From Basidiobolus meristosporus CBS 931.73 (taxonomy: Eukaryota; Fungi; Basidiobolomycota), in contig MCFE01000550.1 in assembly GCA_002104905.1 (NCBI GenBank), positions 1 through 59,426 on the forward strand: a stretch of 59,426 bases of DNA. Direction: 5' to 3'. The translations under genes and the position numbers were made by a program. This document shows, one piece after another, positions 45,790 to 59,426 of this stretch (position 1 is its first letter; every line of letters starts with the position of its first letter). Below the pieces are notes generated by a model that was given only the letters and a program-made list of their open reading frames with translations, searched no databases and was not told the DNA's origin.

Positions 45790-46576
45790 TCATTCCGATG
45801 AATAATACATTTATGATTTTGACATTTCGAGTTCAGTGTTTTTAGATGTTTTCCGGTATAAATAAATCTCACTTATCTTCAACCTAGCAAGTAAATGTAA
45901 AGTGTCCACCGTTAGCTTCAGGATAAACTGGTGCATAAGCTCTCCTACGCTACACATATACGGGCTGGTATCCAGGCCGACATAGGGAAAAGCCTGTGAA
46001 AAAAGCAGAAACCATCAAGGAATGGCTGTTTACCACTCATTGATATCTAATCATGAAGCAGTCTTTGGGTAATGGAGCTACAGACTTCTTTTAACATGCT
46101 CCGTGACATGGGACTGCTGATTCAAACCTGATATCACCCAATCATTCTGGAGCCAAAAATTGTGGCTTGGCTACGTTATCAGAATATCATTTCTTGCCTA
46201 ATGATAATATGGTTTCAATGAAAGAAAAGCCGCATCGAAGTTTGGGGTATTCTCCATAAGATTGTAATTCTTGGCAATTTCCGGGACTTTTACAATTCAT
46301 ATATTCCGTCATACGAACTTAAATCAAAAGTACATTCTTGATGAAAATACTAAGGATGCCCCAGATGATTTGACACTTCGATATTGAACTGAGAAATCTA
46401 TTTGAATTATCAGAGTTCATTGAGTTTTTATTTCTGTGATTGATAAACTGTGGTCAAGCTCCTAATGTTTCTGGCAGGGCACTTTCCCAAAGCACATTCA
46501 CCATGAGTCCAACAAGGGCTGCTTAAAAGTGTCAATATTTGTCTGAGCTTAATATTCCCTATGAAAAAAAAAACCA

Positions 46577-46999
46577 TGATGATCCTGTCAAAAGACTGTT
46601 GCAAAATTGAAATCTCATGACCAAGAGGTAATGATGACATTAGGACACCCCAAGAAAAAAAACCAAGAGGAAGGAAAGTCATCAATATAGGTGAAATATT
46701 CATATGAATCCAGATAAGTCAATCTACAAATAAACAAGCCAGCTGGAAATTCTAAGTTCCCATAGTAATGACTAACCATGAGAAAAATAACTGTGATGAT
46801 CTAACCAAAAGGCTGTTGCAAAATCTAGATTCTGTGACTAAGAGATATTGCTGCTGTTGGCACACTGTGCAAATATTGTTGGAAAAAAGCCTTGAGAAAT
46901 ATTGTGATGATCCCATCAAAAGGCCATCACAGATTTAAAATCCTGTGACTAAGAGTACTGATCTCATCAGGACACTGTGCAGAGACCATTGAAAAATAA
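46577..46999. repeat. Degenerate ~110-bp subtelomeric repeat, 3 copies (46577, 46792, 46903)
   Basis: Recurring tgatgatc..caaaag(a/g)c.....a....a..(c)tgtgactaagag pattern. Copies 2 and 3 are 111 bp apart. Confidence 0.65.
46668..46768 (-). mobile_element. Decayed relic of an S-type element 3' terminus
   Basis: ggaaagtcatcaatataggtgaaat...ctacaaataaacaagccagctggaa aligns by eye to the terminus at 47061-47157. Confidence 0.75.
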
Positions 47000-47050
47000 T
47001 TGCACCCCAGATTTCACAAAAAACCTAGTCAAGATTTTTCATCACAACAA

Positions 47051-47977
47051 GGGTTAGGGGAAGGGAAAGTCACCAAGGTAGGTGAAATCTTTATTTGATT
47101 TCAGACAAGTCTAACTACAAATAAAGAAGCCAGCTGGGAATAGAAGATTCCCAAAGTAAACACCAAGTTGAATATGAATAAATCTAAGCTAAAGTTAAGA
47201 CAGTATCCCAGAGTACACTGGAGTTCAGGTTCATGGGGGAGTGAAGTAGATGAGCTTGAGAGACATAATAATCTTTGGGGAAGTGTATAACAGCAGGTGA
47301 AGGGGAGTCTTTGATAAGTGAAGTGAATCTTGAGAGCAGAGATTCCTCTAATGAGAAGGTCTTGTAAACTGGAGAATCAGGAAACTCTTTAAAGGCATGG
47401 TCAGTAGGTTCCCAAAAAAACTGGTCAGAGACATTTGAGAGAATTGTTTAGCAATACTTTTGTCAAGTACTACCTCTAGAGTGTGATGGTTGATAAATCT
47501 CATGTTAACAATCTTGGATAAGTTGTAACCTTGTTGCTTGAGATACATCCTATGCTCAGATATAGGAATAAACTCCACATTGGCAAAGTAGCAGACATCC
47601 CAGTCAGTAGCAGGAGGTAAATCAGAAGTGGCAGGAAACCTTCTTTTGGTCTTGGGAGGAGCAGCAGGATTTCTTGAGGAAGCAGGAACAGGCTTTTTGA
47701 CAGCTTCAGAGTAGGAAGAGTGAGCAGGAGCAGATGATTCTTGGGGAGTCTTGTTGACAGGAAGAGTTGGCACAGGGACAATAGATTCTTGCAGATCAGA
47801 GAAAGCAGAAAACAGCTTTTGAACTTGTTTCTAGAGTAAAGCATTTTCAGCTTCAACAAGTGCAAGCCTTTCCTCAAGGAAGAAAATCTGAAGGAAATGG
47901 AGTGAAGGCATCAGAAATAAGAAGAAGAGGCTAAGATGGGGTGGGTGGGTGGAAAAATTAGCAGAGAGAAGAGAAGG
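47051..47977 (-). mobile_element. E1: short ORF1-only telomeric retroelement (family S), inactivated copy
   Basis: Starts at gggttagggg followed by the conserved terminus. It is colinear with 51405-52330 along its whole length and has the same 5' end. Confidence 0.85.
47184..47911 (-). pseudogene. Disrupted ORF1 of E1
   Basis: Homologous to 51535-52263, with AAG>TAG near 47831 and a 1-nt deletion near 47436. Confidence 0.8.
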
Positions 47978-48640
47978 GGTAAGGGGAGGGAAAGTCACCA
48001 AGTTGGTGAAATCTTTATTTGAGTTAAGAACTAATTGTTGTATCCAAGAGAAAGTGTAACAAAACTCTTAAATAGTTTAACTGTACCAAAGGGACAATTA
48101 AGTGCAGAATCTTAGAATTGTCAGAGAGTGGCGGAAATATTAGCAGAAAGATTCTGATCTAATATTGGTCTTGGATATAGCTGGGTTGGCTATAATGACA
48201 ATGATATTTGTTTGCTAGGCAGGCTAGGCTTGGTGTTCTTTGGAGTGCTAGATATACTAGGCTTGGATAGAAACCAGAACGGAATTGTTGGATTCTTATT
48301 TTTTCTGAGACAGAATCTAAATTTTGTTGAGACACACACTAAACCAAAAGGTTCAGTAAACTTTATATATACTTTTCTGATCAAGTTGAATTAGTAAGTG
48401 CCAAGGGACTGGATAGATTGAAATCAATTTGAGTGTTCATAGGTGCTTAAGATAAATGAAAATTACATCATCAATCACCTGATGTCTTGGCAACTGCACA
48501 GTGGTTGGATAGATCTCAGATGACTAATCACCTGGGAAGGCTTGGCAGATAGGTTGATAACATAATGACCATTTGAAAATAGATCAGGTGTGATAGCTAA
48601 AAATAGATTCTGAGGTGGGATAAAATACACTGTAACTGGG
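47977..48640 (-). mobile_element. E2: ~660-bp segment with a B-type 3' terminus and a unique body
   Basis: gggtaagggg-agggaaagtcaccaagttggtgaaatctttatttgagttaagaactaat nearly matches 57372-57428 and then diverges. No recognisable long ORF. Confidence 0.7.
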
Positions 48641-48714
48641 TTAGGGGGGAGGGAAAGTCACCAAGGCAGGTGAAATCTTTATTTGATTGCAGACAAGTCT
48701 AACTACAAATAAAG
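48638..48714 (-). mobile_element. E3: terminus-only (~65 nt) S-type copy flanked by telomeric repeats
   Basis: gggttagggggg-agggaaagtcacc...ctacaaataaag-ggttaggg. It ends exactly at the distal arm of the larger hairpin. Confidence 0.8.
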
Positions 48715-48757
48715 GGTTAGGGTGTAGGTGTTATAGTAAGGGCTAGGAAAAGGTTAG
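48714..48757 (+). repeat. Decayed TTAGGG-type telomeric tract
   Basis: gggttagggtgtaggtgttatagtaagggctaggaaaaggttag. Confidence 0.55.
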
Positions 48758-48760
48758 AAG

Positions 48761-48831
48761 AGCAGGGGGTCTGGGGGACGCAGTCCCCTAGAGAATAAAA
48801 AAGCAGGGGGTTTGGGGGATGCAATCCCCTA
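48761..48831. repeat. Two 30-bp G-rich hairpin direct repeats
   Basis: agcagggggtctgggggacgcagtccccta (48761) and agcagggggtttgggggatgcaatccccta (48802). Confidence 0.85.
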
Positions 48832-48895
48832 TACTGCTCCCATACTCTTTAAATTCCCATTGGATTACTTTTCTCTCATTCTTGGTTCTGGTCCC

Positions 48896-48937
48896 TTAGG
48901 GTTAGAATTCCTCCTCCTAACCCTTATCACCCTAACC
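48896..48937. repeat. Telomeric units in opposed orientation (TTAGGG then CCTAAC)
   Basis: ttagggttag-aattcctcct-cctaaccct-tatca-ccctaacc. Confidence 0.6.
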
Positions 48938-49346
48938 ATAAATATTTTTACCCTACAATTGGCACATTGTCTGCTCATATAGTGGGCATGTCTGGGCCAA
49001 TATTTGTCTCCCTATACTGTCCATATGCTCTGTATAAGTCTTGATGACTATTTAATTAATAAATTGTTATTTTTAATGTATATCTAATAATTAATGGGAT
49101 TCATCCCAATCTGACCACAATCCCATATTTTGATAAGCTTTGGGCACCACAAATTGCGCGGCCCTAATATGATAAAAAAATTCATGGCCAATACAAATTT
49201 TCTGTAACCCAATTGCTTTTACCAAATATAAAGTGTATCCCAAAGTTCAATATATATTATGGCTATAATAGAAACTTTATTTGACACCATTGCAACTACT
49301 ACTTATGTTCTATGCGCACATGTATCCCGCAGGAATTGTAAAACTT

Positions 49347-49822
49347 AGCCACGTGGTACAAAAGTGATTTTATTTTTCATCATGATAGTTTAACATGAGT
49401 CCCTAACGCACTTTTATAGTGCGTGGTAACCATACCCCAACAGGTTTTAAGGATACCCACTTGCTACATTTACTTGTGTCTAGTGGGAGTTAGCAATCAT
49501 CAGCCGCGTGGTAATAAAGTGCTTTTATTTTTCATCATGATAGTTTTACATGAGTCCTTAACGCACTTTCATAGTGCACGGTAACCATACCCCAACAGGT
49601 TTTAAGGATACCCACTTGCTACGTTTACTTGTGTCTAGCGGGAGTTATCAATCATCAGCCACACGGTAATAAAGTGCTTTTATTTTTCATCATGATAGTT
49701 TTACATGAGTCCCTAATGCACTTTTATAGTGCACGGTACCCATACCCCCAGAAAGTAGTGTGGATGCTTACTTTAAACGCTCACTTGTGTATTGTACAGA
49801 CTATCAACAAACAGCCGCGTGG
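49347..49822. repeat. ~155-bp tandem repeat, about 3 copies plus the start of a 4th
   Basis: Units start at 49347, 49502, 49657 and 49813 (agcc(a/g)c..gg) and share ttttatttttcatcatgatagttt.acatgagtcc.taa.gcac. Confidence 0.9.
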
Positions 49823-50207
49823 GAATGGAACATCATAGAAAAGCATTGCTTTGTTGTTAGCAAGTATTGATGCGCAAATAGTGGTACTATGTGAATTATT
49901 GAGTAACTATTTACTCTAGTTGGTTCCAAGATATTCCTAGACAATATGCTCAAAATCAATATTAGCATCAATAGCTTGCTCTTTGATCACTAAACCACCG
50001 CACCCAATATGAGGTGGCCTTGGTTTTGTCTAGCTGTCAAGGAATGAAACCAGAGTACAGTCACAAGAGAGGCAAAAGTGAAATGTGATGAAGTAAGTGT
50101 ATATGAAAGTAATATAAATCTACAGGACAGAAGAGAACAACCAGTAGTTAAACAGCACTCACTGACACTCCACCAAGTAGAGCACCAACACGGACAATAA
50201 ACAAGTC

Positions 50208-50669
50208 ATGAGGGGAAAGCTTAAGGACCGCTACTTGGGGATCAAGACCAAAAGAGGAAGCTGCCTCTACCATAGCAGTCCTTGCGCTCCAAAGGAAGAC
50301 CAAGAGTCTATTATAGACAAAGATTGCGGCAAGAAGAGCAGTACAATTACCAGTTCTGGTAGTGGTACCTTTGGAAGTCCCAAATACCTGGAGAAAACTT
50401 GGAAAAAATTGGCAGATGACTCAGTTGTCCTGAGGAGAAAACAAACCAATGCGATTGAGCAGTTCCAAAACAAACTTCAGCTTAGTTCTTCTTTGCCTCA
50501 CTATAAAGTACTCCAAGTGGCTTATTTGGATTATAAGCGTATGAAGAAGAATCAGGCAGAGACTGATAAATTAAGTGATAGTCAATTGCATCACTTCTTA
50601 GATCAGGTAGAGAAACAGTCGCACAGCCAAGAGACGGAACAAGAATTGACAATTACAGAAACCAAATAA
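50208..50669 (+). CDS. 153-aa ORF of unknown function inside the array, opposite in strand to the elements
   Basis: ATG-initiated open frame followed by an AT-rich tail with AATAAA motifs at ~50695. No family recognised; it may be a fragment. Confidence 0.35.
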   Translation: MRGKLKDRYLGIKTKRGSCLYHSSPCAPKEDQESIIDKDCGKKSSTITSSGSGTFGSPKYLEKTWKKLADDSVVLRRKQTNAIEQFQNKLQLSSSLPHYKVLQVAYLDYKRMKKNQAETDKLSDSQLHHFLDQVEKQSHSQETEQELTITETK

Positions 50670-50706
50670 TTTTGCCAATGTAGTTTTGCATTTTAATAAA
50701 ATAAAA

Positions 50707-51407
50707 GGGTAGGGGGAGACAGTCACGAACAGGTGAAATCTTTATTTCAGTTGAAACAAAGAAGCCAGCGCTACTGTTGTAGCTTTGATACAAGCGTGTG
50801 TAGCTGAGGGGAATTTGTAGGTAAGTTGATAAGAAGTGATGATAGTTCTTCAGTGCTCAAGACACTGTTCAGTGGGAAGGGGGGTAGCAAGAGAGGTAAG
50901 AATGACTTGTGAACAACATTAATGAGGGGAATGTGATAAGGATTGATATTCATCATAAAGGGAGTGTGCTGCTGCAGATATTGCTGCCAAAGGTCTGTCA
51001 AGTACTTCAGGTAGGCCAGCTTGGGTTTTTCTGACTGCAGAATATAGTGAGCAAACTTCTTGACTTCAGGATCTCCCAGTAGAGTTCTCCAGCAGGAGCC
51101 AGGTGTAGTGTGGTGTGTTCTCTTCCAGGCCTTAATCAGTGGGTTCTTGCAGTTGTGAAGTCTGAGGTATAATCTGGTTCTAAGGTAGAGAAGTCTGATC
51201 TTATAGGGCATAAACCCAAAAGCACCAAGAATAGCATGTCTGTAGGGGCATTCAGGCAAATGAGGCACCAAGGAGGTAATGCACCATACTGCAAACTTGT
51301 CAAGCTTAGTGCAGTCTCTAGAAGTAAGAGAGAGAAGTGGTAAGCCAAATTCCAGGACAGGGAAGACAAACTGCTTGAGTAGAAGGAGGCAGCTGGGAGA
51401 TGAAGTT
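50707..51407 (-). mobile_element. E4: 5'-truncated family A LINE copy (~700 bp)
   Basis: A-type terminus after gggtaggggg. It encodes the C-terminal part of family A ORF2. Confidence 0.9.
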
Positions 51408-52330
51408 AGGGGAGGGAAAGTCACCAAAGTAGGTGAAATCTTTATTTGATTTCAGACAAGTCTAACTACAAATAAAGAAGCCAGCTGGGAATAGAAGATT
51501 CCCAAAGTAAACACTAAGTTGAATATGAATAAATCTAAGCTAAAGTTAAGGCACAATCCCAGAGTACACTGGAGTTCAGGTTCATGGGGGAGTGAAGTAG
51601 ATAAGCTTGAGAGATATAATAATCTTTGAGGAAGTGGGTAACAGCAGGTGAAGGGGAGTTTTTGATAAGTGAAGTGAATCTTGAGATCAGAGATTCCTCT
51701 AATGAGAAGGTCTTGTAAACTGGAGAATCAGGAAACTCTTTGAAGGCATGGTCAGTAGGTTCCCAGTAAAACTGGTCAGAGACATTTTTAGAGAACTCTT
51801 TAGCAATACTTTTGTCAAGTACTACCTCCAGAGTGTGATGGTTGATAACTCTCATGTTGACAATCTTGGATAAGTTGTAACCTTGTTGCTTGAGATACAT
51901 CCTATGCTCAGATATAGGAATAAACTCCACATTGGCAAAGTAGCAGACAGCCCAGTCAGTAGCAGGAGGCAAATCAGAAGTGGCAGGAAACTTTCTTTTG
52001 GTCTTGGGAGGAGCAGCAGGATGTCTTGAGGAAGCAGGAACAGACTTTTTGACAACTTCAGAGTAGGAAGAGTGAGCAGGAGCAGATGATTCTTGGGGAG
52101 TCTTGTTGGCAGGAAGAGTTGGCACAGGGACAATAGATTCTTGCAGATCAGAGAAGGCAGAAAAGAGCTTTTGAACTTGTTTCTTGAGTAGAGCATTTTC
52201 AGCTTCAACAAGTGCAAGCCTTTCCTCAAGGAAAGATATCTGAAGGGAATGGAGTGAAGGCATAAGAAATAAGAAGAAGAGGGTAAGAAAGGGTGGGTGG
52301 GTGGGAAAATTAGCAGGGAGAAGAGAAGGG
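51405..52330 (-). mobile_element. E5: full-length ORF1-only element (family S), intact
   Basis: About 65-nt pyrimidine-rich 5' leader, 242-aa ORF, ~125-nt 3' UTR ending in the double hairpin and CCCCTAAC. Same 5' end as E1. Confidence 0.88.
51535..52263 (-). CDS. ORF1/Gag-like protein of family S (242 aa)
   Basis: Coiled coil (LEERLALVEAENALLKKQVQKL), low-complexity linker and a domain aligning with family A ORF1 (LPPATDWAVCYF..PISEHRMYLK..LSKIVNM..TLEVVLD versus LPPASTWTVVYL..PISNIRKALK..LSRIVNL..ILEVILD). Confidence 0.8.
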   Translation of the reverse strand: MPSLHSLQISFLEERLALVEAENALLKKQVQKLFSAFSDLQESIVPVPTLPANKTPQESSAPAHSSYSEVVKKSVPASSRHPAAPPKTKRKFPATSDLPPATDWAVCYFANVEFIPISEHRMYLKQQGYNLSKIVNMRVINHHTLEVVLDKSIAKEFSKNVSDQFYWEPTDHAFKEFPDSPVYKTFSLEESLISRFTSLIKNSPSPAVTHFLKDYYISQAYLLHSPMNLNSSVLWDCALTLA

Positions 52331-52743
52331 TTAGGGGGAGACAGTCACCAACAGGTGAAATCTTTATTTCAGTTGAAACAAAGAAGCCAGCGCTACTGTT
52401 GTAGCTTTGATACAAGAGTGTGTAGCTGAGGGGAATTTGTAGGTAGGTTAATAAGAAGTGATGATAGTTCTTCAGTGCTCAAGACACTGTTCAGTGGGAA
52501 GGGGGGTAGCAAGAGAGGTAAGAATGACTTGTGAACAACATTAATGAGGGGAATGTGATAAGGATTGATATTCATCATAAAGGGAGTGTGCTGCTGCAGA
52601 TATTGCTGCCAAAGGTCTGTCAAGTACTTCAGGTAGGCCAGCTTGGGTTTTTCTGACTGCAGAATATAGTGAGCAAACTTCTTGACTTCAGGATCTCCAA
52701 GTATAGTTCTCCAGCAGGAGCCAGGTGTAGTGTGGTGTGTTCT
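52328..52743 (-). mobile_element. E6: 5'-truncated family A copy (~415 bp)
   Basis: A-type terminus. Truncated at gtgtgttc, followed by ttagggttaggg. Confidence 0.9.
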
Positions 52744-52811
52744 TAGGGTTAGGGGGGAGACAGTCACCAACAGGTGAAATCTTTATTTCAGTTGAAACAA
52801 AGAAGCCAGCG

Positions 52812-55581
52812 CTACTGTTGTAGCTTTGATACAAGAGTGTGTAGCTGAGGGGAATTTATAGGTAAGTTAATAAGAAGTGATGATAGTTCTTCAGTGCTCA
52901 AGACACTGTTCAGTGGGAAGGGGGGTAGCAAGAGAGGTAAGAATGCCTTGTGAACAACATTAATGAGGGGAATATGATATGGATTGATATTCATCATAAA
53001 GGGAGTGTGCTGCTGCAGATATTGCTGCCAAAGGTCTGTCAAGTACTTCAGGTAGGCCAGCTTGGGTTTTTCTGACTGCAGAATATAGTGAGCAAACTTC
53101 TTGACTTCAGGATCTCCAAGTATAGTTCTCCAGCAGGAGTCAGGTGTAGTGTGGTGTGTTCTCTTCCAGGCCTTAATCAGTGGGTTGTTGCAGTTGTGAA
53201 GTCTGAGGTATAATCTGGTTCTAAGGTAGAGAAGTCTGATCTTATAGGGCATAAACCCAAAAGCACCAAGAATAGCATGTCTGTAGTGGCATTCAGGCAA
53301 ATGAGGCACCAAGGAGGTAATGCACCATACTGCAAACTTGTCAAGCTTAGTGCAGTCTCTAGAAGTAAGAGAGAGAAGTGGTAAGCCAAATTCCAGGACA
53401 GGGAAGACAAACTGCTTGAGTAGAAGGAGGCAGCTGGGAGCTGAAGTTGTAGGAGGAGTAACAGCCAGTAGCTTGTGGAGTGCCTGTCTTGCCAGGATAA
53501 TTCTCTTCTTCAGGTGTGCTCCAGAGTCTAGTCCAGTAGGAAGGAAAGGAAAGCCAAGATATGTAGCAGAAACCTGAGCAGGTAGAGTGGAGTTCTCCAA
53601 GTTGATGGGAGAGCCCAAAGGTACTGTCTTTGCAATGGAAAGCTGGAGATTATTCTTCTGCAGATACTGGTGGATGGTCTGGGAGTCTTGTTGCACATTG
53701 GAGGAGGATATTCTGATGTCATCAGCAAAGAGAGTAACCAGGCAGTCAGCTGAGAGTCTTGGGAAATCATTCAGGAAGATGGCAAACAGTATAGGACCAA
53801 GCATAGAGCCTTGAACCACTCCATTAGGAACTGAGAACACAGCTGATTGCTCACTTGGGTGCAGAATTCTTGCTTGTGGATCCAGAAACAGAGACCTGAC
53901 AAGGAGGGTGAGAGAGGTACTGGAGAAGCATTGCAACTTGGACCAAAGCAGATTTCTGTCAACTGAATCAAAGGCCTTAGTAATATCAAACAGAACAGAG
54001 GGATACTTGCACTGGAGAGAGTGATCTTGGCTAAGTATGACTGCATATTCCAAGGAGAGGCCAGGAACAAAGCCAAACTGTGCAGGATGAAACTTGAGAG
54101 AGTCAGAGTAGAGCTCCTGAGCAAGCAGAAGCTCAAACACCTTTCTGCAGGTGGGCAGCAGAGATATTGGCCTGTAGGAGCTAGGATCCAGGTGCTTTCC
54201 TTTACCCTTGTACAGTGGCAGAACATTTGCAAAGGACCATTCCTCAGGAGTAGAAAGCTGGGCTGAGCATTGCTGAAACAGTGGAAGCAGAAGTGCAGAC
54301 ATGGCCTTGGTACTAGTCTTCAGAAGCTCATAGGAGATTGTGTCCACACCTGGAGCTGTAGAGTTGGGAAGCCTCTTGAGCACATTATGGATTCTCCTTT
54401 GATCAAGTGCAAGTGGGATGGGCAGAGTCTTGAAGTCAGGATGAAAGCCAGGAGTTGAGTACTGCTTTGTAGAGAAGAAGATGTTAGCCAGCTGTTCTGT
54501 TGAAGGTAACTTCCTGGAAGAGGGCCTCATTGCCCTGTAGAGTCTTGATACTGTTCTTGTTATAGAGTTGGAAGATTGCAGAGGCAAGGAACTCATAATA
54601 TGATCCCAGAGCTGAGTATGCAGAGTGTGGTGAATTGCCTTGGAGTGGTGTATTGCTGTCAGGAGGAGTTTCTCTGTTTTTGGGTTAGGGAAACTCAGGT
54701 AGCTTTGTTGCAGGGCTAAAACAATGGATTCCCATTTTCTTGAGGTAACAGCAGTAGTCTTGCATGGCAGTGAGAGGGAGGCAGACACCAGAATCAGATG
54801 CTTCACAAAGAGCCAGGCATAGTTGAGATCATCTGGCAGAGAAAGTAGCAAACTTGCAAGCTTCAAGTAGTTCCCAAAGTCTTTCTTCTGATTCTTAGTA
54901 GCTTTGTGGGTGAGCACAGTAAGTTTTGGCAGCTTCCTCTTCACAACTGGTTGCATAGAAAGGGACCAGGCTGGGTGGTCAGAGGCTCTCAAGGATCCTA
55001 GCTCAGCTCCAGAGAATTGCTTAACTTCATTCACAAAGTAGAGGGCAGCAGCAGAAGGGCAGATCCAGTCAACACATCTTTTCTCAGATTGAGCACCTAG
55101 TGCTAGCAGGTGGCTTTCTCTCAGGAAGTTCAGTAGGAATGTAGACCTTGGCTTCATTCTTGCAGTCAGAGTAGTCTTGTTCTCAGGATGGGGAATGTTG
55201 AGATCTCCAAGCAAGATAACAGGTGTTGATATAGATTGTTGGTATTGCTGAACCTTCTGGCATATAACTTGCACTTCCTGAAGGGCAAGACTTGGAGGCA
55301 GATAGCAGAGTACCAGACTGATAGTTGGCAACTGGAGAGCAGTCACAGTAAGGGGAGTAAAGAGGAACACAGAGCTGAGGAGTATTGATGGTAGAAGAGA
55401 TGAAGCAGATAGAGGAGGTATTCTTTGTTCTAGGAGTAGAAAAGCAATATAGATTAGTCAAAAGTATAGAGGGTAGCTGAACATCAATCAAACACAGGAG
55501 GGAAAATCTTGAAAGAAGTCTCTCTAGAGTTGGTCTTGATGGCTGTATGCTGTTGCAGTTAAGCAACAGAACTTCAGGTAG
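52812..55581 (-). CDS. Family A ORF2: APE endonuclease plus reverse transcriptase (one +1 frameshift near 55370-55400)
   Basis: APE motifs LLNCNS, LCLID, CYLPP, ILLGDLN, VDWI and SDH. RT motifs TAPGVDTI, YRPISLL, QFGF, DITKAFDSV, GVVQGSMLGPILF and FADD. Confidence 0.9.
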
Positions 55582-56464
55582 TCAGGCAGAGGTTGTAGCT
55601 TCTTCAGAGGCAGCATTGATAATGTGACCTGCAGAGTCCCAGAGCTCTTCAAATGGTGCATCACTTAAGTCAGCAAGGAGGGAAATGGCATGATTCTTGA
55701 GGAAGTATGCCACATCATAGGAGGGGGCTTGTCTCTTGATGGCAGCAAAGAAAGACAGAATGGCAACATGGGCTGGAGGCTTGTTGAACAGTAGAGAGTC
55801 AGAGGATTCAGATTCTTCAGGCACAATCTTGAAGTCAGTTTTCAGCCAGTTAAGGTTCTTCTCCACAAAGGCAACAAATGGGTCAGCAATGTTTTGGTCT
55901 AGGATAACCTCCAGAATCTTCCCTTTTCTCCAGGCCAGGTTGACAATTCTTGAGAGCTGAATATTGCATGCCTTGAGTGCTTTCCTGATGTTGGAAATGG
56001 GGGTCCAGGGAACTTGCTTCAAGTACACCACAGTCCAGGTAGAAGCTGGTGGTAGGTTTGCTGGGGGCTTGTAAGTCCTTCTGTGTTGCAATGGAGCTGC
56101 AGTAGTCAGATTGGAGTCCACATTCTCAGTAGAAGGTTTTCTTGATGTATCTTGCTGAATAGTACTGGAGCTGGATGTGCTGATAATTCTTGCTAGAACC
56201 TTGCCTGCATAAGGTCTGAGGTATAGCTGAGGTGACTGTAGAGGTGGTGGCAGCTGGTGCAGGTGGAGAGGCAGAGACTGAAGCAGGAACTGAGGTCACC
56301 TGGGAGAAGGCAGTGGAAGCAGGTTTTCTGGGAGGAACAGAGTTCGCTATCCAGTTGTTCTGTAAAACACTGGAGTAGCTTTTCTGTGGAACAGGATCTT
56401 GCTCTTGAACAGGAACATAAGCAGGAGGCTGGGGCTGAGCAGTAGTGGTAAGGCAGTGGCACTC
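55582..56464 (-). CDS. Family A ORF1 (5'-truncated; one frameshift between 56126 and 56296)
   Basis: KSYSSVL and a Ser/Thr/Pro-rich linker, then the conserved domain shared with family S ORF1. Ends at TGA 55582. Confidence 0.75.
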
Positions 56465-57373
56465 AGGGTTAGGGGGGAGACAGTCACCGACAGGTGAAAT
56501 CTTTATTTCAGTTGAAACAAAGAAGCCAGCGCTACTGTTGTAGCTTTGATACAAGAGTGTGTAGCTGAGGGGAATTTGTAGGTAAGTTAATAAGAAGTGA
56601 TGATAGTTCTTCAGTGCTCAAGACACTGTTCAGTGGGAAGGGGGGTAGCAAGAGAGGTAAGAATGACTTGTGAACAACATTAATGAGGGGAATGTGATAA
56701 GGATTGATATTCATCATAAAGGGAGTGTGCTGCTGCAGATATTGCTGCCAAAGGTCTGTCAAGTACTTCAGGTAGGCCAGCTTGGGTTTTTCTGACTGCA
56801 GAATAAAGTGAGCAAACTTCTTGACTTCAGGATCTCCAAGTATAGTTCTCCAGCAGGAGCCAGGTGTTGTGTGGTGTGTTCTCTTCCAGGCCTTAATCAG
56901 TGGGTTGTTGCAGTTGTGAAGTCTGAGGTATAATCTGGTTCTAAGGTAGAGAAGTCTGATCTTATAGGGCATAAACCCAAAAGCACCAAGAATAGCATGT
57001 CTGTAGTGGCATTCAGGCAAATGAGGCACCAAGGAGGTAATGCACCATACTGCAAGCTTGTCAAGCTTAGTGCAGTCTCTAGAAGTAAGAGAGAGAAGTG
57101 GTAAGCCAAATTCCAGGACAGGGAAGACAAACTGCTTGAGTAGAAGGAGGCAGCTGGGAGCTGAAGTTGTAGGAGGAGTAACAGCCAGTAGCTTGTGGAG
57201 TGCCTGTCTTGCCAGGATAATTCTCTTCTTCAGGTGTGGTCCAGAGTCTAGTCCAGTAGGAAGGAAAGGAAAGCCAAGATATGTAGCAGAAACCTGAGCA
57301 GGTAGAGTGGAGTTCTCCAAGTTGATGGGAGAGCCAAAGGTACTGTCTTGCATGGAAGCTGGAGATTATTCTT
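56465..57373 (-). mobile_element. E8: 5'-truncated family A copy (~900 bp)
   Basis: A-type terminus after agggttagggggg. 273-aa C-terminal ORF2 fragment. Confidence 0.9.
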
Positions 57374-59426
57374 AGGGGGAGGGAAAGTCACCAAGTTGGT
57401 GAAATCTTTATTTGGGTTAAGAACTAATCTAAGTACAAATAAAGAAGCCAATTAAGAGGTCTAGAACCTCTCTAATAAGTAATCTAATTTATGTTTTGTT
57501 TCATCTCTAATGTTTGTTTCAATAAAGTAAAGCTCATCAGGGGTAAATATAAAATTCAGGGGTTTTGGGGGAAGTACAAATTGTAGATGTTTCTGATCAA
57601 TATAATCCAAGACTGGAACCCAGCCTGGGATTAGGTGTAGTAGGAAAGGTGTGTGGACTTGTAAGTAGCTCTGCCACATAGATCTTAGATGGTCCTGAGC
57701 CAGTAGTCTTGGTTTCTCAGCTTTTTGAAGTTTTGAAGCAAGCTCTGTTACTACAGCAGAGCCAACCAGGGTGTGCCAGCAAGAAGATTTCAGGGAGGAG
57801 TTAGATTGAAGCCATAGTTTGATGGAGGGGTTATGTGATTTCTGAAGTTTGACTAGGAAGGAAGCCCGGAGATAGATCATTCGGATTTGGTATGGGTAGA
57901 ACCCAAAGGCTCCATTAGTTGCATGGATATAGGGAGATACTGGAAGATAAGGTACCAAGGATCTGATACACTGATGGAGAAATTTATCCAGGCGGTGAAG
58001 TTCTCTGGAGGTTAGGGGTATAATGTGGAGACCAAATTCAAGTACTGGCAGCACATACTGCTTCAGAAGTATAGGGATCTTTTGAATTGGAGTGTCTGGA
58101 GTGACTACTACCAGAAGCTTTTTGAGAGCCTGTTGGGCAAGACGGATCCTATTATTCAGGTGGAGCTTTGAGTCAATCCCATGTTGACAAAACGGCAGAC
58201 CTAGATATATTGCAGTTTGTTGTGGCAGAATGCTAGTGTTCTGTATAGTTGTAGTGCATCCAATTGGGACTGTCTTGGAAATTGAGAGTGAGAGGTTGTT
58301 GGCAGCCAAGTACTTCTCAATGATGGCAGTGTCTGCTATGGGATTAGGAGTAGCAATCTTGATATCATCCGCATAGAGAGTTAGTAGTGGATAGGGAGAG
58401 TCTGGTGAGGGGCCTTTTGGAAATAAAGGAAAGTCATGTAGGAATATCACAAATAGTAAGGGACCTAGTACAGATCCTTGGACTACTCCATTTGGAACCT
58501 CATAAGTCTCTGATGTGCAACTTGGATGCAAAATTTTGGCTGAGTTCTCACAAAATAGAGAACGTACAAGAAGGGTCATTGGTAGTGTGGTAACTGCTAA
58601 TAGCTTTCTCCAAAGCAGAGCTCTGTCCACAGAGTCAAAGGCTTTAGTAATGTCAAACAGAATGGTTGGCAATGAGAATTGAAGTGAATGATCATGGCTT
58701 AGCACTACAGCCATATCCAAGGAGAGTTTGGGCAAGAAGCCAAACTGAGAAGGATGGAATGGATATAGTTGAGATTGCAAGGATCTTGCTATCATAAGCT
58801 CAAAGATTTTCCGGCAGGTTGGTAGGAGTGAAACTGGCCGGTAAGAACCTGGGAGTGAGTGTTTCCCCTTCCCTTTGTATAAGGGTATTACATTTGCCTG
58901 TGACCAGGCCTTTGGGGTAGTCAATTGTTGGGCACAGATAGAGTAGAATGGGAGAAGTAAGTGACTCATTTTGGAGTAGCACACCCGGAGTAGATCGTAG
59001 GTAATCAAGTCATGTCCAGGTGCAGTATTTGCAGGAAGCTTCTTTAAAATTTTCTCCAGAAGCTTTGCTGAAACCACAATTGGAGATGTTGGACTGGTGG
59101 ATATGTTACCAGTATGGTAGAAAGGAGGAGTGGGATGCATGGTTGAATCAAAGAATATAGGGGCCAGTTTGTCTGGTGATGGTATACTCCTTGCTTGGGG
59201 TCTCATGGCTTTGTATACTCTTGATATGGACCTTGTGGTGGCATTCATATTTACTAAGGGCAAGGTATCCATGATATGAGCCCATAATCTAGTATGCTCA
59301 GTGATCTGTAGTGACTTGGAGTAGGAGATTGCGCTTTCCAGGAGGTTCTGTGTTTTTGGGTTAGGGAAACATAGGTAGCTGGAATTTAAGGCAGAAATGA
59401 TGGATTTCCATTTAAGTTGGTTTGCA
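57372..59426 (-). mobile_element. E9: family B non-LTR retrotransposon (continues beyond the window)
   Basis: B-type terminus at 57372-57450. The RT is colinear with family A but clearly diverged. Confidence 0.92.
57461..59425 (-). CDS. Family B ORF2 reverse transcriptase (open to the window edge)
   Basis: TAPGHDLI, YRPVSLL, QFGF, DITKAFDSV, GVVQGSVLGPLLF and YADD. The frame stays open upstream of ATG 59272 (ANQLKWKSIISALNSSYLCFPNPKT...). Confidence 0.92.
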   Translation of the reverse strand, partial: ANQLKWKSIISALNSSYLCFPNPKTQNLLESAISYSKSLQITEHTRLWAHIMDTLPLVNMNATTRSISRVYKAMRPQARSIPSPDKLAPIFFDSTMHPTPPFYHTGNISTSPTSPIVVSAKLLEKILKKLPANTAPGHDLITYDLLRVCYSKMSHLLLPFYSICAQQLTTPKAWSQANVIPLYKGKGKHSLPGSYRPVSLLPTCRKIFELMIARSLQSQLYPFHPSQFGFLPKLSLDMAVVLSHDHSLQFSLPTILFDITKAFDSVDRALLWRKLLAVTTLPMTLLVRSLFCENSAKILHPSCTSETYEVPNGVVQGSVLGPLLFVIFLHDFPLFPKGPSPDSPYPLLTLYADDIKIATPNPIADTAIIEKYLAANNLSLSISKTVPIGCTTTIQNTSILPQQTAIYLGLPFCQHGIDSKLHLNNRIRLAQQALKKLLVVVTPDTPIQKIPILLKQYVLPVLEFGLHIIPLTSRELHRLDKFLHQCIRSLVPYLPVSPYIHATNGAFGFYPYQIRMIYLRASFLVKLQKSHNPSIKLWLQSNSSLKSSCWHTLVGSAVVTELASKLQKAEKPRLLAQDHLRSMWQSYLQVHTPFLLHLIPGWVPVLDYIDQKHLQFVLPPKPLNFIFTPDELYFIETNIRDETKHKLDYLLERF

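What the first reader, a model, noticed from the sequence alone, without database searches (positions are those of the whole stretch)
46668..59426. Fungal chromosome end built from a multi-family HeT-A/TART-like retrotransposon array interleaved with single TTAGGG units
Seen: nine element copies plus a relic, all on the minus strand, head-to-tail, with junctions at 47051, 47977, 48638, 50707, 51405, 52328, 52743, 56465 and 57372. Each junction has about one or two TTAGGG units (or a one-base variant) and no poly(A) tail. Family A copies share the 3' end but have different 5' truncations (~415, 700, 900, 3700 bp). Established: the G-rich telomere strand runs 5'->3' toward the chromosome end, and Drosophila HeT-A/TART/TAHRE, MoTeR and TRAS point their 5' ends outward as these do. 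The fungal telomere-associated LINEs I know (MoTeR, Cnl1) are RLE-type, not APE-type. Inference: two RT-coding families and an ORF1-only partner extend the chromosome by priming on the telomeric 3' end, possibly cooperating with or partly replacing telomerase.
Basis: partly seen in the sequence, partly recalled or inferred. Interest (0 to 1): 0.95.

Follow-up and report, generated by a model that had tools for sequence, protein, structure and literature searches.

The report
Chromosome-end stack of telomere-tailed LINEs
The right end of this fungal contig is a one-way stack of jumping genes whose RNA ends in the complement of the telomere repeat; they appear to be copied onto worn or broken chromosome tips in a genome that also has a telomerase gene and normal telomere caps, and I found no report of this type in fungi.

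Summary
From 46668 to the contig end at 59426, ten copies of a conserved 3' tail all lie on one strand. Each is joined to the sequence before it through about one TTAGGG unit, with no poly(A).

- Two of the nine "copies" are composites. One is a 59-nt tail plus a truncated LTR. The other is a 78-nt tail plus the first 2.0 kb of a Kelch-SNF2 helicase subtelomeric element. Both inserts lie in + orientation.
- A TERT gene is present, and sister contigs end in 100-220 bp (TTAGGG)n caps set directly on truncated elements. The elements therefore work beside telomerase and do not replace it.

What is there:
- Two RT families, 50% identical, each with a real AP-endonuclease fold.
- An ORF1-only partner.
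- A shared two-hairpin 3' RNA tag.

Junctions show 1-4 nt of microhomology with the telomere register far above chance. Non-LINE DNA is cut distally and capped by LINE tails. No nested insertions were seen.

Most likely mechanism: the telomere-complementary RNA 3' end anneals to a deprotected chromosome 3' end, which primes reverse transcription.

Relatives with the same tail occur in other public samples. The scan had already found this system on other contigs of this genome. I found no paper describing it.

The parts
46668..46790 (-). Relic: old family-B-like 3' tail, unique to this contig, not preceded by a telomere unit
   Evidence: 73% to the tail reference; median 82% to 13 other copies; no other genomic match for 46400-46893.
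46893..47050 (.). Piece of an unrelated dispersed repeat that abuts the first telomere unit; it is unknown whether it is truncated here
   Evidence: 1637 first-look candidates on both strands at 88-93% identity. Flanks of other copies could not be fetched.
47051..47977 (-). Family B copy 1 (ORF1-only element, full length, reading frame broken)
   Evidence: 96% to copy 2; ORF split; 95.3% median identity to other copies.
47977..48035 (-). 59-nt 3' tail of family C, preceded by GGGGTAAGGGG
48036..48640 (+). First 605 bp of an LTR of a high-copy LTR retrotransposon, cut distally at ...ACTGGG and joined to a telomere unit
   Evidence: at least 895 candidates on both strands, with pairs 5.2 kb apart; sharp TG start after a purine tract; other copies continue beyond 48640; the missing remainder is not in the window.
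48641..48716 (-). Telomere unit plus a 78-nt family B tail
48714..50710 (+). Proximal 2.0 kb of subtelomeric 'element D'. It starts with a fixed degenerate telomere-like stretch, holds three 155-bp tandem repeats, and is cut distally at ...AAAAGGGT
   Evidence: at least 73 matches, with orientation fixed relative to contig ends; the same proximal end is joined to different truncated LINEs, and other copies run on for more than 6.4 kb. SNF2-rel_dom 2.5e-29 and Helicase_C 5e-15 on the + strand; the remainder is absent from the window.
50707..51405 (-). Family A copy, 3'-terminal 700 bp
51405..52328 (-). Family B copy 2, full length, with an intact 242-aa ORF (51535-52263) homologous to the C-terminal domain of family A ORF1
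   Evidence: 35% identity, E 1e-22; coiled coil plus a beta-alpha-beta-beta-alpha-beta domain.
52328..52743 (-). Family A copy, 3'-terminal 415 bp
52743..56465 (-). Family A copy, 3.7 kb. It holds part of ORF1 (55582-56121), an in-frame UGA, then the APE+RT ORF2. The frame is broken near 55365 inside the APE domain; intact copies exist elsewhere in the genome
   Evidence: RVT_1 9e-25 and a partial Exo_endo_phos_2 match; at least 46 open 922-aa ORF2 copies in the genome. UGA-CUA junction.
56465..57372 (-). Family A copy, 3'-terminal 900 bp
57372..59426 (-). Family C copy (second RT family), running off the contig end; 603-aa open frame at 57461-59272
   Evidence: RVT_1 7e-21; 50% aa identity to family A ORF2.

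Best explanation
This is the subterminal part of a chromosome end in an early-diverging fungus. Earlier notes of the scan name it Basidiobolus meristosporus.

It was built by repeated addition of a group of APE-type LINEs:
- two autonomous families, A and C;
- an ORF1-only dependent, B;
- elsewhere in the genome, a SINE.

All members share a 3' RNA tag. It consists of a long hairpin that contains AAUAAA, a short CACC/GGUG hairpin, and a single-stranded C-rich end reading ...CCCCUAA(CCC).

Inferred mechanism:
1. A chromosome end loses its cap by erosion or breakage.
2. Its 3' end anneals by 1-4 nt to the UAA/CCC end of the RNA.
3. The element's reverse transcriptase extends that 3' end. The new copy therefore lies with its 3' end inward and its variably truncated 5' end outward.
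4. The new end is then capped by telomerase with about 100-220 bp of TTAGGG, or extended by another element.

Shown here: the anatomy, the orientation, the restriction to contig ends, the microhomology, the healing of non-LINE DNA, and the presence of caps and a TERT gene.

Inferred: priming on natural ends without endonuclease cleavage, the exact RNA 3' end, and the order of events.
For: 1. End restriction and polarity.
- The family B/C-type tail has 277 genomic matches.
- 19 of 20 sampled + hits lie within 7.3 kb of the right contig end.
- All six listed - hits lie within 9.5 kb of a left end.
- 48 of 49 ORF2 copies scored lie on the - strand.

2. Caps. Ten of the 20 sampled ends finish in telomere repeats; the nine measured caps are 102-221 bp of TTAGGG joined directly to truncated A or B bodies at arbitrary positions. 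A TERT RNA-binding domain is present.

3. Junction content. Junctions carry a median of only three telomere-like letters before the G run. That is too few for insertion at random points in a tract of about 35 units.

4. Microhomology. Of 20 usable junctions, 16 share at least 1 nt and 12 share at least 2 nt between the truncated parent and the telomere register. Expected shares are 25% and 6%; binomial p is about 1e-7 and 1e-10. One copy is truncated exactly at family A's internal GGGTTAGGG.

5. Healing of non-LINE DNA. An LTR (48640; also two cases in L003) and element D (50710) are cut distally and capped by LINE tails. Their remainders are absent downstream.

6. No nested insertion was seen at about 35 junctions.

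7. Shared 3' structure. Seven tails from different families fold the same way, with z scores from -2.0 to -5.3. The alignment fold has 15 pairs, 3 of them with compensatory changes.

8. Conservation elsewhere. Relatives at 48-80% aa identity in other public samples have the same tail plus CCCTAACCC, and the same head-to-tail joints.

9. Short-read contigs of the same strain hold many distinct joints of the form truncation point + short TAGG-type filler + tail.

10. Age trend. Identity to other copies rises outward across the window: 82, 95, 95, 97.8, 97.4, 98.8, 97.8, 98.8%.
Against: - The APE domain is conserved in five lineages, with N, Y, D, N, D, D and H catalytic positions intact. This suggests that it is used. 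Its role is not explained by pure end-priming, although Drosophila TART and TAHRE also keep an endonuclease domain (my own knowledge).
- The within-family age test inside arrays gave no signal: 8 pairs against 8. Family A copies are all 98-100% alike.
- This contig has no cap of its own, so what lies beyond 59426 is unknown.
- No RNA data were available, so the RNA 3' end is inferred from DNA junctions only.
- Some array structure comes from DNA-level duplication, for example three tails 120 nt apart with the same truncation point in L004.
- G-run lengths in this long-read assembly may contain homopolymer errors.
Confidence: 0.6

Rival explanations
1. These are TRAS/SART-like site-specific elements. 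The APE nicks the G strand at a fixed place in duplex telomere repeats, and target-primed reverse transcription inserts the element inside the tract. The short units seen today are what remains after later loss of repeats.
For: The APE fold is real and its best retrotransposon match is the TRAS1 endonuclease. The catalytic positions are conserved. A few junctions do carry about 1.5 to more than 4 telomere units (L011, L012, L013).
Against: - Most junctions have no complete unit on the proximal side and sit on non-telomeric DNA.
- The priming ends are heterogeneous (T, TT, TTA, GG, GGG, GGGT) rather than at one nick position.
- SART1 needs at least three repeats and keeps a poly(A) tail (PMC7265360). 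Neither holds here.
- The catalytic Glu is replaced by Asp in all lineages.
Confidence: 0.15
2. Each run of copies is one event. The reverse transcriptase jumps from a broken template to the 3' end of the next RNA, making a concatemeric cDNA in one round.
For: The 1-4 nt microhomology is also what template jumping by LINE reverse transcriptases produces (my own knowledge). Family A copies within an array are nearly identical.
Against: - Non-cDNA pieces (an LTR in sense orientation, and the gene-bearing element D) lie between copies and are themselves truncated and capped.
- Inner copies are clearly older: 82-95% against 98-99%.
- Terminal caps sit on single truncated copies.
Confidence: 0.1
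3. Retrotransposition was rare. The arrays were spread and reshaped mainly by recombination between chromosome ends, through break-induced replication and unequal exchange.
For: Element D has one fixed telomere-like proximal end that is joined to many different truncated LINEs, which suggests telomere-repeat-primed copying. L004 holds a tandem triplet with the same truncation point. D copies differ in their number of 155-bp repeats.
Against: - The truncation points are almost all different.
- At least 46 fully open ORF2 copies at about 98-99% identity show recent activity.
- Recombination does not explain the microhomology with the RNA end.
Confidence: 0.08
4. The array is a misassembly of repeats in a long-read assembly.
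For: The contig stops inside a repeat, and short-read contigs do not bridge the window's own junctions in the rows shown.
Against: The same junction class is present in short-read contigs of the strain, in dozens of other contigs, and in assemblies from other samples.
Confidence: 0.02

Closest known systems
Drosophila HeT-A / TART / TAHRE telomere arrays
   Same: Head-to-tail, one-way arrays at chromosome ends with 3' ends inward and variable 5' truncation. A gag-only element (HeT-A; family B here) sits beside RT-coding APE-type LINEs. Attachment is to ends rather than insertion into a target (reviews PMC5537684 and PMC4700185; features partly from my own knowledge).
   Different: Here telomerase and TTAGGG caps are kept. 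The joints carry a telomere-complementary unit instead of oligo(A). All members share a structured 3' tag. The host is a fungus. Clade membership (Jockey) was not tested.
Endonuclease-deficient Penelope-like elements Athena and Coprina
   Same: Short reverse-complement telomere repeats at the element's 3' end are used to attach to exposed G-rich overhangs. The elements are confined to chromosome ends, and Coprina occurs in fungi (PMC8557442).
   Different: Those elements have a PLE-type RT, no endonuclease, and hammerhead ribozyme motifs. Here there is an N-terminal AP-endonuclease fold, an ORF1, and no Rfam match.
Bombyx TRAS1 / SART1 (telomere-repeat-specific APE LINEs)
   Same: APE + RT LINEs confined to telomeres in a host that has telomere repeats. 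A structured 3' UTR is needed for template choice. Short telomere-like RNA stretches can anneal to the target (PMC7265360).
   Different: Those elements insert inside long repeat tracts at a fixed nick, need at least three repeats, and carry poly(A). Here the joints lie on non-telomeric ends, hold one unit or less, and have no poly(A).
MoTeR, FoTeR and Cnl1 (fungal telomeric non-LTR elements)
   Same: Fungal, located at telomeres, separated by short TTAGGG stretches, 5' truncated.
   Different: Those belong to the CRE/SLACS clade and have a C-terminal restriction-like endonuclease (PMC12857005). Here the endonuclease is an N-terminal AP-type domain, and the nearest relatives outside the lineage are APE LINEs at 25-34% identity.
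Endonuclease-independent L1 retrotransposition at uncapped mammalian telomeres
   Same: The LINE machinery uses a deprotected chromosome end as primer (Morrish 2007, as reviewed in PMC4700185).
   Different: That is an opportunistic side reaction in mutant cells, using poly(A) RNA. Here it looks like the elements' main way of life, with a dedicated telomere-complementary 3' end.
Yeast Y' and fungal telomere-linked helicase elements (for element D only)
   Same: A multi-copy subtelomeric unit that carries a helicase gene, is bounded by an internal telomere-like tract, and has a fixed orientation towards the end.
   Different: The helicase is a SNF2-type protein with Kelch-like repeats. It is not the helicase type I recall for Y' and the fungal telomere-linked helicase genes, which I did not check. 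How it moves was not tested.

Membership tests
APE-type non-LTR retrotransposon (LINE) | Reverse transcriptase domain of the non-LTR type | tested here: met
   RVT_1 at 9e-25 (family A) and 7e-21 (family C). Best solved relative is human L1 ORF2p at 5e-13.
APE-type non-LTR retrotransposon (LINE) | N-terminal AP-endonuclease fold with catalytic residues | tested here: met
   Model pLDDT 82, pTM 0.83. Foldseek matches: ExoA 1.9e-9, TRAS1 EN 3.6e-9, and also APE1 and L1 EN. N7, Y92, D125, N127, D170, D200 and H201 are invariant. The catalytic Glu is Asp (D32) in all five lineages; the effect on activity is unknown.
APE-type non-LTR retrotransposon (LINE) | Variable 5' truncation with a common 3' end | tested here: met
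   Family A copies of 415, 700, 900 and 3700 bp here. Many other truncation points occur in other arrays and in short-read contigs.
APE-type non-LTR retrotransposon (LINE) | Target-site duplications flanking insertions | tested here: not met
   No interrupted target continues beyond any of about 35 copies examined. This fits end addition.
TRAS/SART-type telomere-repeat-specific LINE | Insertion at a fixed site inside long telomere repeat tracts (three or more units needed) | tested here: not met
   Median of three telomere-like letters before the G run. 17 of 21 joints have fewer than two units. The priming ends are heterogeneous. The requirement is from PMC7265360.
TRAS/SART-type telomere-repeat-specific LINE | Poly(A) tail at the 3' junction | tested here: not met
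   No A or T run at any of the 10 tails in the window.
TRAS/SART-type telomere-repeat-specific LINE | RT groups with the R1 clade | not tested
   No reference set of LINE clades was on hand. The nearest proteins outside the lineage are 25-34% identical and mostly unnamed.
Drosophila-type HTT telomere array | One-way head-to-tail array at chromosome ends, 3' ends inward, with a gag-only partner | tested here: met
Drosophila-type HTT telomere array | Telomerase and its repeats are absent; the array itself is the telomere | tested here: not met
   TERT RNA-binding domain at 40.5 bits against a cut-off of 25.
EN-deficient Penelope-like elements (Athena/Coprina) | Reverse-complement telomere repeats at the element's 3' end | tested here: met
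   On the sense strand the elements end ...CCCCTAA(CCC) in families A, B and C and in relatives.
EN-deficient Penelope-like elements (Athena/Coprina) | No endonuclease; PLE-type RT; hammerhead ribozyme motifs | tested here: not met
   An APE fold is present. There is no Rfam match at E up to 0.1 across 46000-59426.
MoTeR/FoTeR/Cnl1 (CRE/SLACS clade) | Restriction-like endonuclease C-terminal to the RT | tested here: not met
   The only endonuclease found is the N-terminal APE. Pfam finds nothing else in ORF2. The defining feature is from PMC12857005. I ran no dedicated motif search for the REL signature.

The most novel reading that the evidence does not exclude
A telomerase-positive fungus keeps a group of APE-type LINEs: two autonomous families, a gag-only dependent and a SINE. 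Their RNAs have evolved a telomere-complementary 3' end and a common structured tag. Their normal mode of replication is then to prime on deprotected chromosome ends. They would act as a second, RNA-templated end-healing system beside telomerase. This would be a living intermediate between telomere-parasitic LINEs (TRAS/SART) and the domesticated Drosophila array, and a convergence with endonuclease-free Penelope-like elements.
Probability: 0.5. Interest if true: 0.85.

Novelty: new variant of a known kind. Interest (0 to 1): 0.8.

Why it matters
How Drosophila came to replace telomerase with retrotransposons is an old open question, because intermediates are missing. Here both systems coexist on the same ends, and many element copies are intact. 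The structured 3' tag and the telomere-complementary tail are defined, and the fungal host may be workable in the laboratory. That makes several questions directly testable:
- whether a LINE can heal broken ends;
- what its AP endonuclease is for;
- how one reverse transcriptase serves several dependents.

The system would also broaden fungal telomere biology beyond the REL-type MoTeR group. It shows that a telomere-complementary RNA end, known from endonuclease-free Penelope-like elements, arose independently in APE LINEs.

Tried and rejected
- Age gradient within a family inside arrays: no signal (8 pairs against 8; family A copies 98-100% alike). Only the cross-family trend in the window and in L003 points to older copies inside.
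- RT clade: not resolved. No clade reference set was available. PDB gives only L1 ORF2p. The protein atlas gives only generic APE+RT clusters. Names of database hits are automatic.
- ORF1 fold: model pLDDT 62. The C-terminal domain is confident and RRM-like in topology, but Foldseek found nothing below E 0.04.
- APE by sequence against PDB: no significant hit. The fold had to be shown by modelling.
- Rfam and tRNA scans of 46000-59426: nothing found. The tRNA-headed SINE reported elsewhere in this genome is not in this window.
- Reads: only short-read contigs of the source strain were served, and no RNA run. They break at every repeat and cannot show what caps this contig.
I therefore could not see a full-length family A 5' end in this genome, nor the flanks of the repeat at 46893-47050.
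- Hairpin 2 shows almost no covariation (CACC/GGUG is invariant). Support for the structure rests mainly on hairpin 1 and on fold energies.
- Rejected: that the + strand ORF at 50208-50669 is a LINE gene (it lies in element D), and that 47977-48638 is a SINE (it is an LTR fragment).

Full report
**Where we are**

The window is a whole 59,426-bp contig (C869) of an 89.5-Mb, 1366-contig assembly. Its first 46 kb carry ordinary genes: a glycogen debranching enzyme, a tubulin, an MFS transporter and a topoisomerase piece. The debranching enzyme's best named relatives are early-diverging fungi at about 50% identity, and none is close. The host is therefore an isolated early-diverging fungus. Earlier notes of the scan name it Basidiobolus meristosporus. 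I did not verify the name itself.

**The observation**

- From 46668 to the contig end, the + strand carries ten copies of a conserved tail whose core is GGTGAAATCTTTATTT. All ten are on the + strand. One further 3-mismatch hit lies in the other 46 kb, against 0.88 expected by chance.
- Each tail is preceded by (0-3 G) + TTA + a run of 4-6 G, apart from one TAA and one single-T variant. None is preceded by poly(A).
- Read on the minus strand, every element therefore ends ...CCCCTAA(CCC).
- Family A is present as copies of 700, 415, 3700 and 900 bp with one common 3' end.
- Family B is 923 bp long with a 242-aa ORF and occurs twice.
- Family C runs off the contig end.
- The family A ORF2 has RVT_1 (9e-25) and a partial endonuclease match. 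Family C has RVT_1 (7e-21) and is 50% identical to A.
- The family B ORF is homologous to the C-terminal domain of A's ORF1 (35% identity, E 1e-22).

**Corrections to the anatomy**

- 47977-48638 is not one element. It is a 59-nt family C tail followed by the first 605 bp of an LTR in + orientation. That LTR belongs to a dispersed family with at least 895 candidates on both strands. Pairs lie 5.2 kb apart, and each copy has a sharp TG start after a purine tract. Other copies continue beyond the point where this one stops. Here it is cut at ...ACTGGG and followed by TTAGGGG plus a 78-nt B tail.
- 48714-50710 is the proximal 2.0 kb of 'element D', a subtelomeric repeat with at least 73 matches and an orientation fixed relative to contig ends. 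It always begins with the same degenerate telomere-like stretch, joined to different truncated LINE bodies. It runs on for more than 6.4 kb elsewhere. It encodes, on the + strand, a protein with weak Kelch-like matches plus SNF2 and Helicase_C domains. In the window it is cut at ...AAAAGGGT and capped by a family A tail.
- The missing parts of the LTR and of D are not in the window.
- The 'relic' at 46668-46790 is a unique old B-like tail.

**Is this a chromosome end?**

- The tail pattern has 277 genomic matches, 244 forward and 33 reverse.
- Of 20 forward hits sampled in list order, 19 lie within 7.3 kb of the right contig end.
- Ten of those 20 contigs finish in telomere repeats. The nine measured caps are 102-221 bp of (TTAGGG)n and sit directly on truncated A or B bodies at arbitrary positions.
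- All six listed reverse hits lie within 9.5 kb of a left end.
- ORF2 copies are on the - strand in 48 of 49 scored cases, and 46 of the 49 are fully open over about 922 aa.
- A TERT RNA-binding domain is present above Pfam's cut-off.
- The arrays are therefore subterminal, uniformly oriented, and capped by normal telomere repeats. This contig merely stops before its cap.

**The proteins**

- An intact family A ORF2 (L012) and four relatives align over a complete N-terminal domain of about 205 aa. The motifs LLLNC.S, YLPPS, GDLN.PHPEN, KRCVDW and GSL..SDH are invariant.
- A model of this domain (pLDDT 82, pTM 0.83) matches ExoA, the TRAS1 endonuclease, APE1 and the L1 endonuclease at about 1e-9. 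Sequence search alone had failed to find them.
- The Glu of the usual 'ET' metal-binding motif is Asp (LIDV) in all five lineages.
- ORF1 and ORF2 lie in one frame, split by UGA followed by CUA or CUC in six elements. This suggests readthrough.
- ORF1 has a coiled coil and a confident beta-alpha-beta-beta-alpha-beta domain, but no significant structural match.

**The RNA tag**

- Seven tails from families A, B and C, the SINE and three foreign relatives all fold the same way. Each has a 10-12-bp hairpin whose 3' arm holds AAUAAA, then a 4-6-bp CACC/GGUG hairpin, then a single-stranded C-rich end (z from -2.0 to -5.3).
- The alignment fold has 15 pairs, three of them with compensatory changes.
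- The scan had reported the same tag from other contigs.

**Mechanism**

- Across the window and 28 other array pieces, the telomere-like stretch before the G run is typically just TTA (median 3 letters, range 0-25).
- Where the truncated parent can be mapped, the letters missing from TTAGGGG are supplied by the parent itself. Examples are TT|AGGGG, TTA|GGGG, T|TAGGG and GGG|TTAGGG.
- Of 20 usable joints, 16 overlap by at least 1 nt and 12 by at least 2 nt. Expected shares are 25% and 6% (binomial p about 1e-7 and 1e-10). One row of the 21 was a self-match and is dropped here.
- One copy is truncated exactly at family A's internal GGGTTAGGG.
- The priming ends differ (T, TT, TTA, GG, GGG, GGGT). 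This argues against a single endonuclease nick site.
- Tracts of more than one unit are rare. This argues against insertion at random points in a cap of about 35 units.
- SART1, by contrast, needs three repeats and poly(A), and inserts into the tract (PMC7265360).
- No element is followed by the continuation of the one it 'interrupts'.
- Sequences that cannot be cDNA in this orientation (the LTR, three cases; element D) are cut distally and capped by tails.
- Taken together, the best reading is addition onto deprotected, often non-telomeric, 3' ends. The RNA's UAA/CCC end anneals by a few bases, and the same kind of end can alternatively be capped by telomerase.
- Template jumping in one event would give the same microhomology. 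It does not explain the intervening non-cDNA pieces or the older inner copies (82-95% against 98-99%).
- The within-family age test was uninformative.

**Elsewhere**

- ORF2 relatives at 48-80% identity come from at least eight other public runs or assemblies.
- Where their contigs reach the 3' end, they show the same tail, followed by CCCTAACCC(TAA) and then another element or a full-length 5' end.
- The next-nearest proteins are only 25-34% identical. One that I examined, from a marine metagenome, has an AT-rich 3' UTR with no telomere unit.
- Short-read contigs of the source strain contain many further truncation-point/filler/tail joints. The junction class is therefore not an artefact of the long-read assembly.

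**Comparison and novelty**

- The array works like the Drosophila HeT-A/TART/TAHRE array in polarity, end addition and the gag-only partner. It fails that family's defining absence of telomerase.
- It shares the telomere-complementary 3' end with the endonuclease-free Penelope-like elements Athena and Coprina (PMC8557442). It differs in having an APE and a LINE-type RT.
- It differs from the published fungal telomeric elements MoTeR, FoTeR and Cnl1, which are REL-type (PMC12857005).
- It resembles, as a way of life, the endonuclease-independent L1 insertions seen at uncapped mammalian telomeres (PMC4700185).
- Three full-text searches found no paper on such elements in Basidiobolus or on APE-type telomere-tailed LINEs in fungi.
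- The scan itself had already described the system on other contigs of this genome.
- This report adds several things to those notes: the healing of non-LINE DNA, the microhomology statistics, the modelled endonuclease fold with its Glu-to-Asp change, and the in-frame UGA. It also adds the relatives found in other public samples and the recognition of element D and the LTR inside this array.

Noticed in passing
whole genome: (TTAGGG)4 occurs 7604 times forward and only 81 times reverse, and element tails 244 against 33. Nearly all assembled telomeres therefore sit at right contig ends. This is probably a convention or artefact of the assembler, but I could not explain it.
   Followed up: no
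window 48714-50710; L052:70-6500: Element D is a multi-copy subtelomeric unit longer than 6.4 kb. It has a fixed degenerate telomere-like proximal end, 3-5 copies of a 155-bp tandem repeat, and a + strand gene with weak Kelch-like matches plus SNF2 and Helicase_C domains. Its proximal end is joined to many different truncated LINEs, as if copied from a telomere-like seed. Earlier notes mention a tyrosine recombinase further out.
   Followed up: partly
window 48036-48640; L037, L038: A high-copy LTR retrotransposon (at least 895 first-look candidates, LTR pairs 5.2 kb apart at 96-97% identity). Its LTR appears three times at array positions, each time starting at LTR base 1 and cut distally before a LINE tail (window 48640; L003 near 405 and 3925).
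   Followed up: partly
window 55582-55584 (- strand); L023, L024, L025, L029, L030: ORF1 and ORF2 are in the same frame, separated by a single UGA followed by CUA or CUC in all six elements examined. ORF2 has no ATG of its own at that point. This suggests programmed stop-codon readthrough.
   Followed up: partly
window 54682-54690 and 59358-59366: Both RT families contain CCCTAACCC on the sense strand, inside the codons of the conserved protein motif FPNPK. One copy in another array (L016:4870) is truncated exactly at this internal telomere-like site.
   Followed up: partly
L012:2870-3550 (-); alignment A5: The endonuclease domain has Asp where AP endonucleases have the metal-binding Glu (motif LIDV). 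This is conserved in five lineages 42-54% identical to each other, while the other catalytic positions are canonical.
   Followed up: partly
L004:2520-2880: Three family A tails lie 120 nt apart and share one truncation point, give or take three bases. This shows tandem duplication or repeated slippage inside an array.
   Followed up: no
window 46893-47050: The last 158 bp before the first telomere unit belong to another dispersed repeat (1637 first-look candidates, both strands, 88-93% identity). Whether it is truncated at 47050 could not be checked.
   Followed up: no
L024, L025, L026-L030, L057, L058: Close relatives of the elements, with the same tail and joints, occur in runs ERR14127404, ERR14042393, ERR14042384, ERR14042375, ERR14656578, ERR14127551 and SRR13100619, and in assemblies ERZ27274739 and ERZ23872178. 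The organisms in those samples are unknown to me.
   Followed up: partly
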